This document shows, piece after piece, positions 2,594 through 41,654 of a stretch of DNA of 64,000 nucleotides. The DNA is from Fimbriosthenelais zetlandica (taxonomy: Eukaryota), in the NCBI GenBank assembly GCA_977030845.1, contig OZ365110.1:38750001-38814000 (forward strand), in the 5' to 3' direction. The position numbers and the translations under genes were made by a program. Position 1 is the first letter of the stretch, and each line of letters starts with the position of its first letter. Under the pieces are notes generated by a model. The model made no database searches, was not told the origin of the DNA, and saw nothing but the letters and a program-made list of their open reading frames with translations.

Positions 2594-3664
2594 TCAACAT
2601 GAATCTCTGTGCACTGCATTCAACATGATCTCTACTTCTGACTGACGACGTGTACCTTTCCTCTGGGAACAGTCCAATTTATGAATCAAGGGAACTATTT
2701 CTGGCTGTAAGGCCACCCAAATGAAAGGCAGAATATTCCAGAAAGCCTCACTCAGCAATAGGAGTACTTTCCCTGTATGGGCGAACTGTTTGATCTTCTC
2801 CTCATTCATGGCACCGGGAATTCGGGGGAAGACAAGCTGGATGTAATGTGGGATGACCATAGTGACATATAGGACACTCATAGCCACGATTGATATGCAT
2901 GTATGATGGAGATCCAGCCTATCCATGCCTCCCACAGCGCCCTCCCTCATCCCTGGGTGCCGCCTCAGCCTTTGGCGCCAATGCCACACAAGCAATATTG
3001 AAATAATGACGATTCCCAGCAGGGGGAGTGTGAATCGTAGCAGCAGGATGACAGTGACATAAGTTGCTACGCGGCTAGAATCAATGGCCGGGATACAACG
3101 ACCGGAAATGAGACGCCCTCCTTCCGGCATAACGTGCAGAACGACCCCTAACGTCACTGCCACGGCCAGTAGCCATGGCACCAGCAGGGAGGCCGCTCGT
3201 GCCGGAAGTGACGTCACTTTGTTCTGGTACCACGTCGGGTCACGCACCCAAAGCAGAGTATCCATAGCAATAGTCATAAGGACAAAAGGTAGTGCAGAAA
3301 TGATGTACTGGTGGATGAAAACGTGTAAGCGGCAAAAGTTGTTGTCTGTTTGCCATGTGAATGGGTTCATCATGATGTTTTTGTGGACGTGTGGCAGTTT
3401 GACGAAGACACCGCTGATGGCAAGTAGGAGGACGAAGTGACTTGTTACCATGGTTGTCGGGCGTCTGCCTAGACGGATGATTTGCATACATGTCATGTAC
3501 ATAAACATGAGAGTGGCTGAGAGGAGCTGCCAAGCTGCCATGGCCACAGTCACAGGGCTGATCCCCTCGTTAACTGTGTCATCCTCATACCAAGCTAGGG
3601 ACGAGGGCAATGTCAGGTTCACCTCCCCAGATATCTCTCCACCCACATAAGTCCCACTGCTCAT
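2594..3664 (-). CDS. Divergent orphan rhodopsin-class (class A-like) 7TM receptor, 356 aa, CDS without introns
   Basis: The only long ORF in the window. It has seven hydrophobic segments, an N-terminal NLT sequon, ECL1 Trp (FTWQ), TM3 Cys (NFCRLH) with an ECL2 Cys (GRCIP), TM4 Trp (VPWLL), TM5 Pro (FTLPLL) and TM6 Pro (MVIPHY). The start is placed at ATG 3664 (aaaccATG) because the longer ORF runs through a splice acceptor (ctgtgtttttcag|, exon from 3677). Confidence 0.9.
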   Translation of the reverse strand: MSSGTYVGGEISGEVNLTLPSSLAWYEDDTVNEGISPVTVAMAAWQLLSATLMFMYMTCMQIIRLGRRPTTMVTSHFVLLLAISGVFVKLPHVHKNIMMNPFTWQTDNNFCRLHVFIHQYIISALPFVLMTIAMDTLLWVRDPTWYQNKVTSLPARAASLLVPWLLAVAVTLGVVLHVMPEGGRLISGRCIPAIDSSRVATYVTVILLLRFTLPLLGIVIISILLVWHWRQRLRRHPGMREGAVGGMDRLDLHHTCISIVAMSVLYVTMVIPHYIQLVFPRIPGAMNEEKIKQFAHTGKVLLLLSEAFWNILPFIWVALQPEIVPLIHKLDCSQRKGTRRQSEVEIMLNAVHRDSC

Positions 3665-3677
3665 GGTTTTAGCGCAC

Positions 3678-4200
3678 CTGAAAAACACAGAATAATATTT
3701 TTTTTAAATGTTTATTTCGACTAATGCATGAATAGGCCTAAGACTCAGAATTACGACTAGCCTATGTAGGCTACAATTCAAAAGTAGGCTACACACAAGA
3801 GGCTACGTATTTATCCGCTGAATTAGGCTTAGGCCTAAGTCAAGACATTGTATAGGCCAATAGGCGAATGGAGAAATCCACACAATCCTGTCAATAATTA
3901 GGGCCTAGACATGCTTAAGATTACTAAAGATAACTTAAGTTTAGTCATGCCTGTCATAATTTCTGATGGAGCACAACCTTCGGTATAATACTGGTCTTAC
4001 AAGAAGGGTCATTGGAGACGTTTTGCCTCGCACATTAAAACAGAGGAGTCGCTCGTCGCTGATTGGGACTTCCTGGACTTGTTTGCACAGTCACGCGCAA
4101 GTTGGCTTGCGCGCCAGAATTATTAACCGACTTTATGAAGTTTTTCAGGCATCGCCCGGAATAACTACTAGAGTGCACGGGCCACTGCTTATAAATTATT
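3678..4200 (-). promoter_or_regulatory. Probable 5'-UTR intron and promoter of the GPCR gene
   Basis: Minus-strand acceptor AG at 3679-3678 with a pyrimidine tract, 13 nt before the ATG; candidate donor CTT|GTAAGA at 4000; CpG-rich patch 4015-4180 with CCAAT (gattgg on +) and ETS-like cttcc motifs. Confidence 0.45.
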
Positions 4201-35373: not shown

Positions 35374-36059
35374 GTAGAATATATCCCGTTTTCAAGTTCA
35401 TCGATGACTGTTTGTACATGATAGACTACCATCAAAGTGAAATGAGAACAGTCTATGTACAGTATTATGCTGCCTATATTCAAACAAGGCCAACTCCCAG
35501 TCAGAAGGAGATCAAATACCGCTACTAACGCTGCTTGTCATGAGTTAATTTTAGGACTATAATATTAAGATCTTGCAACTATTTTTATATAAAAGAAAAC
35601 TCTGCGATCGTACAAAAAAAGTCTTAATGCTTGAGGCGACAAGCAGCCAGACAGTGACTAGTGATTGATGGTTTGTAACAGGGCTTAAATATGAAGACTC
35701 TATAATATTTGGCTAACCGTGTATTTTAAAAAAACTGCAAATCTAATCACTGAAAGTATTGCTTACGATAAATCTTGTTGGTATTAAAACATATGTGAAG
35801 GGCAATAAGCTTTATCATGAGAATGCAAAGGGCTGCATTATTTAGGAGATCATGCTTTGCGAGGAAATGTGGAAATCTTGTATTAAGATTGAAAGAGATC
35901 AATTCCATAAGCGTTGTGTCAATGCATCTCTTCTCATTTGATTTATATCTGACTTTTATGGCAAACCAAAGAAGCAGACATTCGGACCCCTGTTTATTTT
36001 GTAGGTCGTGGCCTGTTTGTATTCTTGCAATTACCCACTGGTGACGCAGATTTTCCTAC

Positions 36060-36200
36060 AGGAGTTGGCCAATCAGAGGCCAGTGTGCGAACGTGTCTCC
36101 AAGTCAGTACCTTCCCAGAGTGCAAGTGCGCGCTTCCATTGATGCTAATGACCCTGGTTCAGTAGTCCAGAGAGAGAAAGAGAGAGAGAGAGAGATGAGA
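36060..36200 (+). promoter_or_regulatory. Candidate promoter of the mir-137 host transcript with (GA)n microsatellite
   Basis: NF-Y-type ggCCAATcag at 36069-36073 in a CpG-containing patch, then (GA)n at ~36167-36200 and a long C/A-rich leader. Confidence 0.45.
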
Positions 36201-36494
36201 GCGATGAGATGAGAGTCACCCACACACCTAGACACCCATATGGAACGCATGGGTTTCTGATAGTGTGCAACCAACACCTCTTCCTCATTGCCATGACAGC
36301 CACCATCACTCACACACCCAACCCACACATACGCACATGCCTCATCATCCTAACCCACACACCCGAGCACTCACCCACAGGGCTTCCACCAGCTCATTCA
36401 CACACACTGAGCCCGCCTCAAACAGCATGTGCTTCTACTACTCACGCTCCGCTACAACCAACCAACCAACCCACCTTCTTCTCTCTCACTCCAG

Positions 36495-36627
36495 TTTTGG
36501 GGACGAACCTCTTTAAACTTTCGCCACTTAAGCTGTCTATGCCTGGCTCAGAGTACCCAAAGGCACCAGTTGCTTCAAGCACCACCTCCTGCACTACTAT
36601 GCACCACCTTGGATCCACCAGCAACCA
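36495..36627 (+). ncRNA. Predicted exon of the mir-137 host transcript
   Basis: Strong acceptor cttcttctctctcactccag (AG 36493-94) and consensus donor CA|GTGAGT (36628). Confidence 0.5.
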
Positions 36628-37868
36628 GTGAGTGTGCGCTTTTTATGATTCCATATGTTAGGATGTGGTAGCTACTATACAATCTCGACCACTACAGGTG
36701 TTGCTCTCCCCAGTACCTGATCACTGAACGATGGTCTTCAGTAGATCGCAAGGTGCGACAGGAAGCTATCGTTGTCGCCTGCAGCGATATCACAGCTAAA
36801 GCTATGAGGCACCAGCAGCGAAAGCTCTATTCCTCAATGGGAGGTGCGGAGGAGTGGCGCTGTTTGGCAATATTTTTGTATACAGAACGAACAATGTCAT
36901 GGTGTGGGCTTTCTTCTGCGGGTGAAAGCTTTTGCCTATTGGCCTTTTCTTCCTCCTCTACTCTCTACCTCCACTTCCTTGTATCTGAATGTATGGGAAA
37001 ACTGGGCAGAGGATGGATTCATGGTAGCAGCTGTTCACTTAAAACAACCTTCTCCCATATCCAAGCCTCTGCTGGTACCGTTTACTCTGAGGCCCATATA
37101 GGCTGTGAGTGGGTAATTGCTGGTATAATAAGGAGTGGGACTTCCCCTGTAGGAGTGAAGAAGAGGAGAAGGAAAAGAGATGGAGAAGAGAATTGACTGG
37201 AGGGCATGTATAAGGTAGGGCCAGATCAAATCTCCAACCATTACTGGAACCAGCATCAACTGCCATACGGACCTGCCACCAACATCTCCCACCACCACTG
37301 GCACCACATCCCTCCCACCACACCACCACTAGAGGACAAGCACCACACACGAAGGGAGAAGCTCTTGGAGGCTGGTGGTGCACACATGCACACGCTGCTG
37401 TTGTCAGCATGCATCTGTCACGCCTCCAGCGTTCCAATCAATCATTTGGTATCTGGTATTTGGTCTCCCCTTGTCCCAGCGCTGCAGCAGCCGTGCAAAA
37501 CCTAGTCCATAGACTTAGCCTTTTACACCATGACCGGATCCCCTCTTCTCTCTTCTTCACCCTTTGGTTTTGTACTCACCTTTATAAGCCATTATAGCAC
37601 AGTTTGTATGGATGGACCAACTAACTCGAAACAATCTGAAAAGCATGGATAATCCATATATCTGTGCCAGAAACAGGTGGTTCGTTTCATTTCAACATGA
37701 GGCTATACATACGTGAGCTTCCTTTCATGTCGATACGAGGAGTAGATTTAAAGTGGCAAAAGTGACCACTTGCACCACCATAGCACCACCTCTACCACCA
37801 TAGTTTGACCTAGCCATCTCTAAACTTGGTTCCACCCACCCCTGATCTAGTCAAGCCAAATGCTTCAG

Positions 37869-38145
37869 ACTTTCGGTGCCATCTTTAGATGTGAACAGGC
37901 GGCCCAGAACGCTTCCATATGGTGACTATACCCCCTGGGATGATGAAGCAGTTTCAGGGATTCGAATGGAGAGGCAGAGAAGATCCAACAGGTTGTCTAT
38001 GGGCACTTTAATGGTTTGCGCTCCAGGCTACTGCTCGCCTACCCCACACGCTCTCTCGCTCTACTCCCATATGGCCGTCTCCAGTGGTTTGTATTGGACC
38101 AGACCCCGTCTATCAGCCTTTCCCATATGGGGCACTTTTCCAGAG
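37869..38145 (+). ncRNA. Predicted exon of the mir-137 host transcript
   Basis: Consensus donor GAG|GTAAGT at 38146; acceptor atgcttcag is weak. Confidence 0.45.
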
Positions 38146-38687
38146 GTAAGTGCAGACTGCATATATATTTGTGTTAACTTATCCCATTCGGATATTCTTT
38201 CCATTCCAAGTGAGTGTACTTTATGGCTTTTTTTGATGTGGGTTTCATCTCACTTTGCCAAGATGATTGATCGAGAGTGGGTATTTGCTGAAAGGGCGCA
38301 ACTAAAAGACTCCATCTTTCCTGCACCTTGTTGTGATGGAACTTGAACCCTTTAGGGAATATGAAGGGCCTAAGTCCCTGAGAAGCACCTTAAATTGTCT
38401 GTTTGTTTATTATATTGATCAATGGTTCGATCTACAAATACTACATATTTATTGGGGAGATTGTAACGATATTGTGTGACAACTCCTCCACTGTGTATTT
38501 ACTCAATGTATATTTCAAGAGATGCCTTGAATCATTATCCATCTCATCTGTTAATGTACAATTATGATGTAGCATATGGTAACAATATGAGTTGAAACTC
38601 ACCATGGAATTGGGAGTAAGCAACGTTCAGCTCATTCTCTCTCCAACCTGGAAGATTCAGAGCCTGACAATAACGTTTCCAGGATAC

Positions 38688-38748
38688 TTCCGCGTCAGCC
38701 AATCAGCGAGAAGAAGCAAGGAGTACTCCATTAGTTCTTCTTCCCCAG
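38688..38748 (+). promoter_or_regulatory. CCAAT box and strong splice acceptor immediately upstream of mir-137
   Basis: cttccgcgtcagCCAATcag (CCAAT 38699-38703), then ttagttcttcttccccag with AG at 38747-48. Confidence 0.55.
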
Positions 38749-38787
38749 GCCGCTAGAGCGCTCATGAATCCTAATCGCCCAACTGCA

Positions 38788-38858
38788 TTGATTACGCGTA
38801 TTCTTGGGTGAATAATATACCACTAAGGATGTTATTGCTTGAGAATACACGTAGTCAA
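38788..38858 (+). ncRNA. mir-137: microRNA precursor mir-137 (5p ~38794-38816, 3p 38832-38854)
   Basis: 3p arm TTATTGCTTGAGAATACACGTAG matches the invertebrate mature miR-137 as I recall it (vertebrate form UUAUUGCUUAAGAAUACGCGUAG). 5p arm ACGCGTATTCTTGGGTGAATAAT resembles vertebrate ACGGGUAUUCUUGGGUGGAUAAU. The arms pair with one C/A mismatch, G:U pairs and one bulge, with basal stem ttgatt/agtcaa and a ~15-nt loop. Confidence 0.97.
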
Positions 38859-41654
38859 CGTTGTTAATACGACTTCATGGATTTCATCGGCATGAGAGCA
38901 GCAGGAGGCTGGAGGACATCTCTATCGTGGATTACCTTGACAACTCTTAAAAGCTTTTATGTCTGCAACCCTCAGACTTAAGTGATAGCGATCCTGAAGG
39001 CCACCTTCCAATGTCTCTTCTTATCATGTCATATTATGAGGGAATGGTTTCCGTTTTAATATCAAATTTGCATGAAACACTCAGAATATTGTCCATATGT
39101 GTACTGTTGATATCAGGGTATCTTAGCAGGCCATCCGTTCATGAAAGGAATGACTCATCATTGAATATAGTCAATTAAGCATTAAATCTTATTATGGTAT
39201 TTTGGCCTATTTGTTATATTCTCTCAACAGCGCGTCATATATCAGGTGGTTTGAGACAGGCTCGAAATGTCTTCACTAATGCCTCTTACCATTATCCCAA
39301 AGACTGCCTAATGAGTACTGCCTTGGTAATGAGCGATAATAAGGGTATGTCACAGAACATCCTGGCTTCCATGCAGGGCCTCGCTTCAATAGAATGTTAC
39401 ACTACATTATCCTACAGACTAATGCAGTGGATATTTATTTTGAAATGGACCCAAGGTATGAGGAGATTGCTTTATCCTCTCATATATTATAGCACGGATA
39501 CTACCAAAATTACCTGTACATGTAGACTACCAAACTCGTACACCTGTAGAGTACTGTTACAGTATAACTATCTTATTGTATCTTCTTACATAATGGGATA
39601 TTATTGAACATATATAATGTAGAAACAACGAAAATAGATTAGTTTGTAACAAGTTTACAATCGCCATCGACTTATTCGAAGTTCTAGGATTCTAGGAAAG
39701 TTGTACGTGAAAACTAGGCATACCTGAGTGGTTATTTCTGATCCTCTGGAGCATACGAATCACTTTTCCTAACAGGCTGTCTGTACTTCAGCTCTTTTAG
39801 TATCTCCTAAAGTTATATCTATCTATAAAAGGTGTCTAGTGATTCCCCATCCATTCACATACACGAGCTTCATTCTTGACATTGATACCACAAGGTCTGA
39901 TGCTTCTATTAGTCTTAAGTACTATTAAGTAGCATTAGTTGGACTTACTACTAGGTTGTAAACCTAAGGCTCTATTTCTGAAGTCCATTTTGTGATATTT
40001 TATCAGTTACATACATCGCTTATCAGTTTATATCATATTATTCATAGCCTGTAATAAATGAATGAATATGTATGAGTTATAATCCGTAATATGCTGCCAC
40101 TAGATATCTATTAAAATGATCAATACCCGATGAATTCAGATTTAACGCTATGTCATCAACTTATATGTCATCTTCATGATGAGTACCAAGTTTTAATAAC
40201 TATAATAGGTGGGAAAAGCTTATGATTTAAATAAGTTCAGAGAAAAAGTAAGTTCAGTAAGGTAAATATATTTTATTGCGCATTTAGGTCTATAGACTGC
40301 GTTTTTCATGTTTGAAAAGTATGGTGTCCACACTGAGGGAGCTGAATCAGTCCGCGATATCAGGCTCTCTTGATAATCCATTGCATTTTGGGCCAAAAAC
40401 TGCTTAACATTGCCTAAATCCATGCATGCCGGACAGCGGACAGTCCTTTGGTGTGGACACCCTGCTTAATGTTTTCCCATTTGCTGCCTTGGATATGAGG
40501 ATGACACCCCCTTATTTACAGCCTTCTCCATTCTGATTAGCCCCTCGGTATCAGCTTAAACCCCCATAATGAACTGTCCCCAGGTCTTCTAGCACTAGGT
40601 TTCCTCTCCTTCCTACTTTTCCTCTTACTCTATCATCAGCAGCAGTAGCAGTAAAGGAGGAGCAGCTGCTGTAGCCGGAGGGGGGTGAAAGAGGAAAGGA
40701 GCCTGTAGCTCCGGGCGGCTAGTGGTCAGGCCATATAGGAGTCCAGACAGGCGGGAGGTGGGGCTCTGAGGACCGGGGAGGAGAGATCCCTGAGCCCCGA
40801 GCCCTGCCTAACCCTGCCTCTGTCCCAGTATGGAGTGATTCACGATCTCAACTGAGCCCAAAGCAAAGGAGCAGCTCATCAGAACAACTCATCAACTCCC
40901 AGAGGCACTGAATGCTATATTTAGACGTAGATGGGTTCTTTAGAGATTTATTGCCCCTTTGAAAATGTATAGTTCCCCATGAAACGTCTTGCAGAATATT
41001 TTTGTGAAGGTTTCTAGCTGGATTCCTATTCAAAGTATATCAGTCACGGTCTTAGTCATGTAATTGTATAAATTCCTTACATGAAAATGTTTGTTATTTT
41101 GTTAATAAAGATGATGCTAAAATGGGATTAGACCCAAATTGGTAAACTACGTACCATATTTACTGTATAAATTCATTTATGTTCATGATCTATCATAATA
41201 AATGCTGTTCTGAACAGGACATCCCCTTTCCCACCTTCCTTTAAAAGCAATCATAAGGTATTTCGTCCTAAAAGGTGAAATCTCATTCATTGAATTTATA
41301 TTCTGAATCTATATAGCTACACCTCATAAAATAGAAAGAGCCTAAAAACAAACGTACAGTGTACCCTCAGCTAAATGGGTGCACATCTTAAGTCATTGCA
41401 CTAGGTTAGGGTAGTGATTTTTCCTTGTAGTGACAAAGCACTACTCTCCAGGCAATAGATCTATATAGCAACAGTTGATGGTGGGAGGATAGAGGAAGGC
41501 AACAGGTGGGAATGGACCCCTAACGTCGATACCCAATCTCGATCGAACTGACCTGGCAGGAGGCAAATTCACTGATTGTTTCCCTTCCTTTTATCTTACT
41601 GAATGGAAATTTGGTACGTTGGTCAACAAGCATGTTTTAACAGAGCATTATCTA

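What the first reader, a model, noticed from the sequence alone, without database searches (positions are those of the whole stretch)
38788..38858. Complete mir-137 hairpin hidden in an ORF-free region
Seen: both arms and a pairable basal stem. Established: miR-137 is a deeply conserved bilaterian, neuron-enriched miRNA; the 3p sequence here is the invertebrate form. It is invisible to ORF-based annotation and is the likely reason for the surrounding non-coding landscape. The family is known; this locus and its context may be unannotated. I found no second known miRNA clustered with it.
Basis: partly seen in the sequence, partly recalled or inferred. Interest (0 to 1): 0.78.

Follow-up and report, generated by a model that had tools for sequence, protein, structure and literature searches.

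The report
Genuine mir-137 microRNA gene
This is a real, single-copy gene for miR-137, one of the oldest and best-known nerve-cell microRNAs of animals, sitting in a protein-gene-poor stretch of a protostome (probably annelid) genome; it is a correct but ordinary annotation.

Summary
Window 38787-38859 (+) matches Rfam mir-137 (RF00694) end to end at 76.3 bits (cut-off 56.7, E 4e-15) and is the only Rfam family found in the 64 kb. It folds at -37.2 kcal/mol (z -6). It occurs once in the 447-Mb genome.

- **Mature arm:** the 3p arm (38832/38833-38854) is letter for letter the miR-137 printed in insect, prawn, clam, sea urchin and sea cucumber papers. It differs at two positions from the mammalian form.
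- **Relatives:** fifteen metagenome loci and contigs from four further organisms carry the same hairpin. The duplex is invariant, the basal stem keeps its pairing through double changes, and a CNNC motif sits 15-17 nt past the cut in every lineage.
- **Neighbourhood:** no second microRNA-like hairpin lies within about 3 kb. Several long ORFs lie just upstream, but none shows any sign of coding.
- **Upstream blocks:** a relative's 4.8-kb contig shares five collinear conserved blocks across the 2.8 kb upstream. They may be a promoter, regulatory elements or host-transcript parts.

Expression could not be tested, because no RNA run was listed. The scan also noted this stretch and its host transcript in sibling notes on this same window. 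Verdict: already known family, low interest.

The parts
38787..38859 (+). mir-137 precursor hairpin (full Rfam model)
   Evidence: RF00694 at 76.3 bits against gathering 56.7, model 1-72/72. The minus strand scores only 41.5 bits. Single copy in the genome.
38832..38854 (+). miR-137-3p, predicted dominant mature arm (5' end at 38832 or 38833)
   Evidence: Invariant in all 16 aligned loci, though that invariance is forced because the loci were found with this 23-mer. The exact 22-mer is printed as miR-137 in 18 papers on invertebrates.
38794..38816 (+). miR-137-5p, predicted star arm
   Evidence: Pairing table: A38794 pairs U38852. A 3p end at 38854 therefore leaves a 2-nt 3' overhang, and a 3p start at 38833 pairs A38814, which puts the 5p end at 38816. 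Nearly invariant across lineages.
38781..38793 (+). basal stem, 5' strand, below the predicted Drosha cut
   Evidence: Pairs with 38855-38865. In the alignment the basal helices keep pairing through changes on both sides, at 5 pairs.
38855..38865 (+). basal stem, 3' strand
38870..38873 (+). CNNC motif (CGAC) 16 nt after the 3p end, a known pri-miRNA processing determinant
   Evidence: A CNNC starts at +15 to +17 in all 9 distinct flanks, although those flanks are otherwise unalike. The background rate for the +15..+18 window is 0.16.
38750..38890 (.). conserved block 5: the hairpin plus about 37 nt upstream and 31 nt downstream
   Evidence: Organism A contigs (runs X1, X2) align here with 6 differences in 141 nt.
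38740..38748 (+). candidate 3' splice acceptor (CTTCCCCAG) directly before conserved block 5; inference only
   Evidence: Read from the sequence. Conservation with organism A starts at 38750. No RNA evidence.
37914..38093 (.). conserved non-coding block 4
   Evidence: Collinear piece of the same organism A contig, with 30 differences and 8 gaps. The overlapping ORF has no homologue.
37385..37455 (.). conserved non-coding block 3, holds CCAATCA at 37434
36622..36814 (.). conserved non-coding block 2
   Evidence: 32 differences and 1-, 2- and 3-base indels.
36066..36104 (.). conserved block 1 with an NF-Y-type CCAAT box (GGCCAATCAGAGG), a candidate distal promoter element of the primary transcript
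   Evidence: The promoter role is inferred.

Best explanation
Window 38787-38859 (+) is the single orthologue of the bilaterian microRNA gene mir-137 in this protostome, probably annelid, genome. Inferred mechanism, from what is established for canonical animal miRNAs: an RNA polymerase II primary transcript on the + strand folds into this hairpin. Drosha/DGCR8 cuts about 11-13 bp above the basal junction, between 38793/38794 and 38854/38855, helped by the CNNC motif at +16. Dicer removes the loop. The 3p arm (38832/38833-38854) is loaded into Argonaute and represses mRNAs carrying sites for its seed, mainly in neurons. The 5p arm (about 38794-38816) is the star strand. The 2.8 kb upstream holds conserved non-coding blocks, two of them with CCAAT boxes. 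These are most simply promoter or regulatory elements, or parts of a non-coding primary/host transcript. Shown here: sequence, structure, strand, copy number and cross-species conservation. Inferred: transcription, cleavage sites, arm choice, tissue and targets.
For: Family match: Rfam RF00694 at 76.3 bits against cut-off 56.7, full length, E 4.4e-15. Fold: -37.2 kcal/mol, z -6.05. Strand: + scores 76.3 bits and - scores 41.5 bits; seven G:U pairs on + would be C:A mismatches on -, where the fold opens an internal loop. Copy number: the only copy in the 447-Mb genome by covariance model and by DNA search. Mature arm: the 3p 22-mer is identical to published invertebrate miR-137. Cut geometry: 2-nt overhangs and an 11-13 bp basal stem. 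Relatives: 15 metagenome loci hold the hairpin, and all 9 that I scanned score 68-82 bits for mir-137; only the hairpin is alignable between them and the window. Structure across lineages: 96.6% of cells are paired against 36-49% when partners are slid, and the double changes are confined to the basal stem. CNNC at +15 to +17 in every lineage against a background of 0.16. Contigs from further organisms hold the hairpin, and in organism A also five collinear upstream blocks. Literature: miR-137 is expressed in the CNS of the annelid Platynereis, of amphioxus and of vertebrates (PMC3145563).
Against: There is no expression evidence for this species. No RNA run was listed, so neither the mature product nor its 5' end (38832 or 38833, which shifts the seed by one base) nor the star strand has been seen. 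The hairpins in the alignment were retrieved with the exact 3p 23-mer, so invariance of that arm is by construction. The informative parts are the 5p arm, the basal stem and the flanks. The canonical basal UG motif is absent at -14 (read from the sequence).
Confidence: 0.95

Rival explanations
1. The hairpin is a silent relic: an intact-looking mir-137 copy that is no longer transcribed or processed in this species.
For: No RNA evidence could be obtained.
Against: It is the only mir-137 copy in the genome, and the family is almost never lost in bilaterians (established knowledge). The duplex, basal-stem pairing and CNNC motif are all intact, and the 141-nt block is 96% identical to a relative whose surrounding sequence is about 83% identical or unalignable.
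Confidence: 0.03
2. The functional product comes from the minus strand (an antisense miRNA), or from both strands as at iab-4/iab-8.
For: The reverse complement also folds well, at -33.4 kcal/mol and z -5.4, and scores 41.5 bits.
Against: The minus-strand score is below the gathering score. G:U pairs of the + strand become mismatches on -, opening the duplex. The known mature sequence reads on +, and the conserved CNNC lies 3' of the hairpin on +.
Confidence: 0.02
3. The hairpin lies inside a protein-coding host gene (a coding exon or 3' end), as a sibling note proposes with a 142-codon spliced ORF ending in the 5p arm.
For: There is an unusual crowd of 130-156-aa ORFs at 36209-38346 on the + strand. 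Good splice-site-like sequences are visible at 36628 (GTGAGT), 38146 (GTAAGT) and 38748 (polypyrimidine-AG).
Against: None of these ORFs has a Pfam domain, and the 156-aa ORF has no homologue among 5.8 billion proteins. The translations are low-complexity, His/Thr/Pro-rich from CA-rich DNA. Conserved blocks 2 and 4 differ from organism A by many 1- and 2-base indels, and block 2 lies mostly in the proposed intron.
Confidence: 0.05

Closest known systems
mir-137 of invertebrates (Rfam RF00694; for example Drosophila, mosquito, silkworm, sea urchin, sea cucumber and clam miR-137; Platynereis miR-137)
   Same: Full-length covariance-model match. The 3p arm is identical to the published 22-mer. 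It is a single hairpin without cluster partners. CNS expression is reported in an annelid (PMC3145563).
   Different: Nothing of substance. The loop and flanks are lineage-specific. The closest hairpins found (L008, L018, from metagenome assemblies) differ by one base in the 5p arm and a one-base indel in the loop.
Human MIR137 within the lncRNA host gene MIR137HG
   Same: Same family and the same arm. In human the pre-miRNA lies inside exon 3 of a multi-exon non-coding primary transcript (PMC6692358). Here a strong acceptor-like site lies 39 nt before the hairpin, and conservation with a relative starts right behind it, so an exonic position in a non-coding host is possible.
   Different: The mature arm differs at two positions (G for A at position 10, A for G at position 17 of the 23-mer). 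There is no VNTR next to the hairpin and no CpG island (CpG o/e at most 0.71). No mir-2682-like second hairpin was found. The host transcript here is unproven.

Membership tests
mir-137 (Rfam RF00694 / MirGeneDB Mir-137) | Covariance-model score at or above the curated gathering score over the whole model | tested here: met
   76.3 bits against 56.7, model 1-72/72, E 4.4e-15. Same result in the whole-genome search.
mir-137 (Rfam RF00694 / MirGeneDB Mir-137) | Mature 3p sequence and seed identical to known miR-137 | tested here: met
   The exact 22-mer is printed as miR-137 in 18 papers on insects, crustacean, mollusc and echinoderms. It has two differences from the mammalian 23-mer, both outside the seed.
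mir-137 (Rfam RF00694 / MirGeneDB Mir-137) | Imperfect hairpin with a paired duplex, 2-nt 3' overhangs and a basal stem of about 11 bp | tested here: met
   Predicted only. MFE structure and pairing table, z -6.05.
mir-137 (Rfam RF00694 / MirGeneDB Mir-137) | Conservation of the hairpin, but not of its flanks, in other species, with pairing maintained | tested here: met
   blastn aligns only 61-86 nt around the hairpin. 96.6% of cells are paired against 36-49% for slid controls, with 5 basal pairs showing double changes.
mir-137 (Rfam RF00694 / MirGeneDB Mir-137) | Small-RNA reads from both arms with homogeneous 5' ends (the expression criterion for a bona fide miRNA gene) | not testable with these tools
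   No run of this species and no RNA run was listed. Logan contigs cannot show 22-nt RNAs.
Canonical Drosha-dependent pri-miRNA | Downstream CNNC motif about 16-18 nt from the Drosha cut | tested here: met
   CGAC at +16 here. A CNNC starts at +15 to +17 in all 9 distinct lineage flanks, against a background of 0.16.
Exonic miRNA in a spliced lncRNA host (MIR137HG-like) | Spliced non-coding transcript whose exon contains the hairpin | not testable with these tools
   There is only sequence-level hints (an acceptor-like site at 38740-38748) and conservation blocks. The organism A contig is collinear and unspliced, and its library type is not on record.

The most novel reading that the evidence does not exclude
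The hairpin is exonic in a spliced, non-coding host transcript. That transcript would start at the conserved CCAAT-box block about 2.7 kb upstream (36066-36104), and its last intron would end at 38748. This would be the same 'pre-miRNA inside an exon of a lncRNA' layout as human MIR137HG, so splicing could compete with Drosha processing in an annelid as reported in human brain. The layout would then be either ancestral to bilaterians or convergent.
Probability: 0.15. Interest if true: 0.4.

Novelty: already known. Interest (0 to 1): 0.12.

Why it matters
It matters little beyond correct annotation. mir-137 is one of the roughly thirty miRNA families shared by protostomes and deuterostomes, and it is already described in annelids. 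The locus is a useful marker when annotating this genome and a clean positive control for miRNA finders. The conserved upstream blocks give concrete candidates for the still poorly known promoters and primary transcripts of ancient neuronal miRNAs in invertebrates.

Tried and rejected
- **Sequencing runs of this species:** a 901-base query listed none. The 107-base hairpin query listed only relatives and metagenomes, none on record as RNA (after two busy answers).
- **Laid contigs:** these gave conservation but no expression. Contig depths were 211 in X1, and about 9-13 for three unrelated contigs in X2, so they do not settle whether those runs are RNA or DNA.
- **Second miRNA nearby:** there is no Rfam hit at E <= 1. 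A 100-nt sliding fold over 35500-40500 gave no other window with z below -3.4.
- **Coding host:** Pfam on 18 ORFs of 95 aa or more found only a distant GPCR. A homologue search of the 156-aa ORF was blank.
- **DPYD microsynteny as in human:** the only Fer4_20 locus is on the same chromosome but 13 Mb away, so there is no microsynteny.
- **Naming the species:** relatives of the GPCR come from unnamed ENA and Logan records. Only 'protostome' could be shown, through the mir-2 clusters. 'Annelid' rests on earlier unchecked notes.
- **Christodoulou et al. 2010 (PMC2981144):** this paper is not held. Its Platynereis result is cited second-hand from PMC3145563.

Full report
**Observation**

A scan of the whole 64-kb window against Rfam 15 gives one match above any family's gathering score. 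That match is RF00694 (mir-137) at 38787-38859 on the + strand, model positions 1-72 of 72, 76.3 bits against a cut-off of 56.7, E 4.4e-15.

- **Fold:** the RNA of 38770-38876 folds at -37.2 kcal/mol. Dinucleotide shuffles average -18.0, giving z -6.05, and none of 200 does as well.
- **Copy number:** in the whole genome (447 Mb, 79 contigs; the window is C10:38750001-38814000) the covariance model and a DNA search both find this place only.

**Strand**

The reverse complement also folds (-33.4 kcal/mol) but reaches only 41.5 bits, below the cut-off.

- The + strand fold contains seven G:U pairs. These become C:A mismatches on the other strand, where the predicted duplex opens into an internal loop.
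- The known mature sequence reads on the + strand.

**Anatomy**

- **3p arm:** 38832 or 38833 to 38854.
- **5p arm:** in the pairing table A38794 pairs with U38852. A 3p end at 38854 therefore leaves the canonical 2-nt overhang if the 5p arm starts at 38794. A 22-nt 3p arm starting at 38833 implies a 5p end at 38816.
- **Basal stem:** below the predicted Drosha cut the stem continues for 11-13 positions (38781-38793 with 38855-38865).
- **CNNC motif:** CGAC starts 16 nt after the 3p end, at 38870.
- These cut sites are predictions. No reads were available to test them.

**'The invertebrate form'**

The exact 22-mer of the 3p arm is printed in 18 papers. They concern mosquitoes, whitefly, aphid, silkworm, Drosophila, corn rootworm, a prawn, the Manila clam, a sea urchin and a sea cucumber. 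The mammalian 23-mer, printed in about 50 papers, differs at positions 10 and 17.

**Relatives**

A scan of public metagenome contigs for the 23-mer returned 15 loci. All 9 that I passed to Rfam score 68-82 bits for mir-137, and no other family is found on them.

- **What aligns:** blastn of the whole window against these loci aligns only 61-86 nt around the hairpin. The best are L008 and L018, at 93% over 86 nt including the loop. The conserved island is the precursor itself, as expected of a miRNA gene.
- **Invariance:** in the 16-sequence alignment (12 distinct rows) the 3p arm is invariant by construction. The 5p arm is nearly invariant too.
- **Pairing:** 96.6% of pair cells are standard pairs, against 36-49% when the partners are slid by 1-3 columns. 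All five pairs with changes on both sides lie in the basal stem, for example G-C in five rows and A-U in five rows at columns 26/97.
- **CNNC:** a CNNC begins at +15, +16 or +17 in all nine distinct downstream flanks, which otherwise share no sequence. The chance of a CNNC start in the +15..+18 window is 0.16 at random places of this window.

**Reads**

No run holding this species' DNA or RNA was listed for a 901-base query. The hairpin alone found 11 holders in 6 studies, none on record as RNA. I laid four of them on 36000-41000 at 80% likeness.

- **Organisms B and C** hold only 38788-38854, with 3 differences and unlike flanks.
- **Organism A** (runs X1, X2) has one contig of about 4.76 kb that lies collinearly on five blocks:
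  - 36066-36104
  - 36622-36814
  - 37385-37455
  - 37914-38093
  - 38750-38890
- **Spacing:** the unalignable letters between blocks are of similar length in the two species (627 for 517, 546 for 570, 508 for 458, 667 for 656).
- **Divergence:** the hairpin block has 6 differences in 141 nt. The others have about 10-17% differences (block 3 the least) and several 1- and 2-base indels.
- **Meaning:** this is conservation of non-coding sequence in a fairly close relative. It is not evidence of transcription or splicing, because the contig is unspliced and the library type is not on record.

**Surroundings**

- **ORFs:** the region is not literally ORF-free. Five ORFs of 130-156 aa crowd 36209-39607.
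  - Their translations are low-complexity products of CA-rich DNA.
  - None has a Pfam domain.
  - The 156-aa ORF that overlaps conserved block 4 has no homologue.
  - The indels against organism A break frames.
  - I therefore read them as compositional artefacts. This also speaks against the sibling note that joins three pieces into a 142-codon ORF.
- **Rest of the window:** 18 ORFs of 95 aa or more were scanned. Only one, an intronless rhodopsin-type receptor at 2594-3688 (-), has a domain. At least the 35 kb upstream and 25 kb downstream therefore show no long coding ORF, although short exons would escape this test.
- **Second hairpin:** no other miRNA-like hairpin lies within about 3 kb. 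In a 100-nt sliding fold on both strands only the mir-137 windows reach z below -5, and the next best is -3.4.
- **Other features:** there is no CpG island (o/e at most 0.71, window mean 0.51) and no tandem repeat beside the hairpin.

**Primary transcript (inference)**

- **CCAAT boxes:** three CCAATCA motifs stand on the + strand at 36069, 37434 and 38699. The first two are inside blocks conserved in organism A. The first is part of a good NF-Y-type box (GGCCAATCAGAGG).
- **Acceptor-like site:** a polypyrimidine-AG acceptor-like site ends at 38748, and conservation resumes at 38750.
- **Human parallel:** in human the pre-miRNA lies in exon 3 of the spliced non-coding MIR137HG (PMC6692358), so a similar layout here is conceivable.
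- **Against an exon-only pattern:** block 2 lies mostly behind a donor-like GTGAGT at 36628, that is in a would-be intron.
- **My reading:** the blocks are regulatory or primary-transcript elements of unknown kind. I put the spliced-host idea at about 15%.

**Organism**

Clusters of mir-2, a protostome-specific family by established knowledge, are present on another chromosome. Earlier notes of this scan call the genome annelid, which I did not verify. miR-137 is reported in the CNS of the annelid Platynereis, of amphioxus and of vertebrates (PMC3145563).

**Verdict**

This is a correct identification of a well-known gene. The family, its invertebrate sequence form, its presence in annelids and its neural role are all established. 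What is new is at most the annotation of one locus and a set of candidate regulatory blocks. Expression in this species remains untested.

Noticed in passing
window 36066-36104, 36622-36814, 37385-37455, 37914-38093: Four non-coding blocks upstream of the hairpin are conserved and collinear in a relative's 4.76-kb contig (runs X1, X2). Two of them carry CCAATCA motifs on the + strand (36069, 37434). They are candidate promoter or regulatory elements of pri-mir-137.
   Followed up: partly
window 36209-39607: Five ORFs of 130-156 aa lie within 3.4 kb, far above expectation. They have no Pfam domain, no homologue (only the 156-aa ORF was searched) and low-complexity translations from CA-rich DNA. 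Probably a compositional artefact rather than a gene.
   Followed up: partly
window 2594-3688 (-): An intronless 364-aa rhodopsin-family receptor (7tm_1, E 5.5e-11). Only two relatives were found, at 74% and 48% identity, so it appears to be a lineage-restricted GPCR.
   Followed up: partly
G000 C19:26618391-26619505 (+) and C19:19186297-19191356 (-); loci L022-L024: Two mir-2 clusters. One has four hairpins, three of them over the Rfam cut-off. The other is a tandem array of at least 12 hairpins about 160 nt apart, four of them over the cut-off. This shows the genome is a protostome. The large array may be the macro-repeat of hairpins noted elsewhere in this scan (s1-200427).
   Followed up: no
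G000 C10:25820166-25820828 (-); loci L002, L003: The only Fer4_20 locus (of the type found in dihydropyrimidine dehydrogenase or glutamate synthase) lies on the same chromosome as mir-137 but 13 Mb away. From memory, DPYD is the neighbour of MIR137HG in human. This is no microsynteny, at most shared linkage.
   Followed up: no
L008:2986-3057 and L018:161-232: Metagenome-assembly contigs (JAAUYG..., JAAUXT...) carry a mir-137 hairpin almost identical to the window's, including the loop (93% over 86 nt). They probably come from related worms in those samples.
   Followed up: partly
window 36169-36215: A (GA)n / GAGAGAGAT microsatellite lies about 65 nt downstream of the conserved CCAAT-box block.
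   Followed up: no
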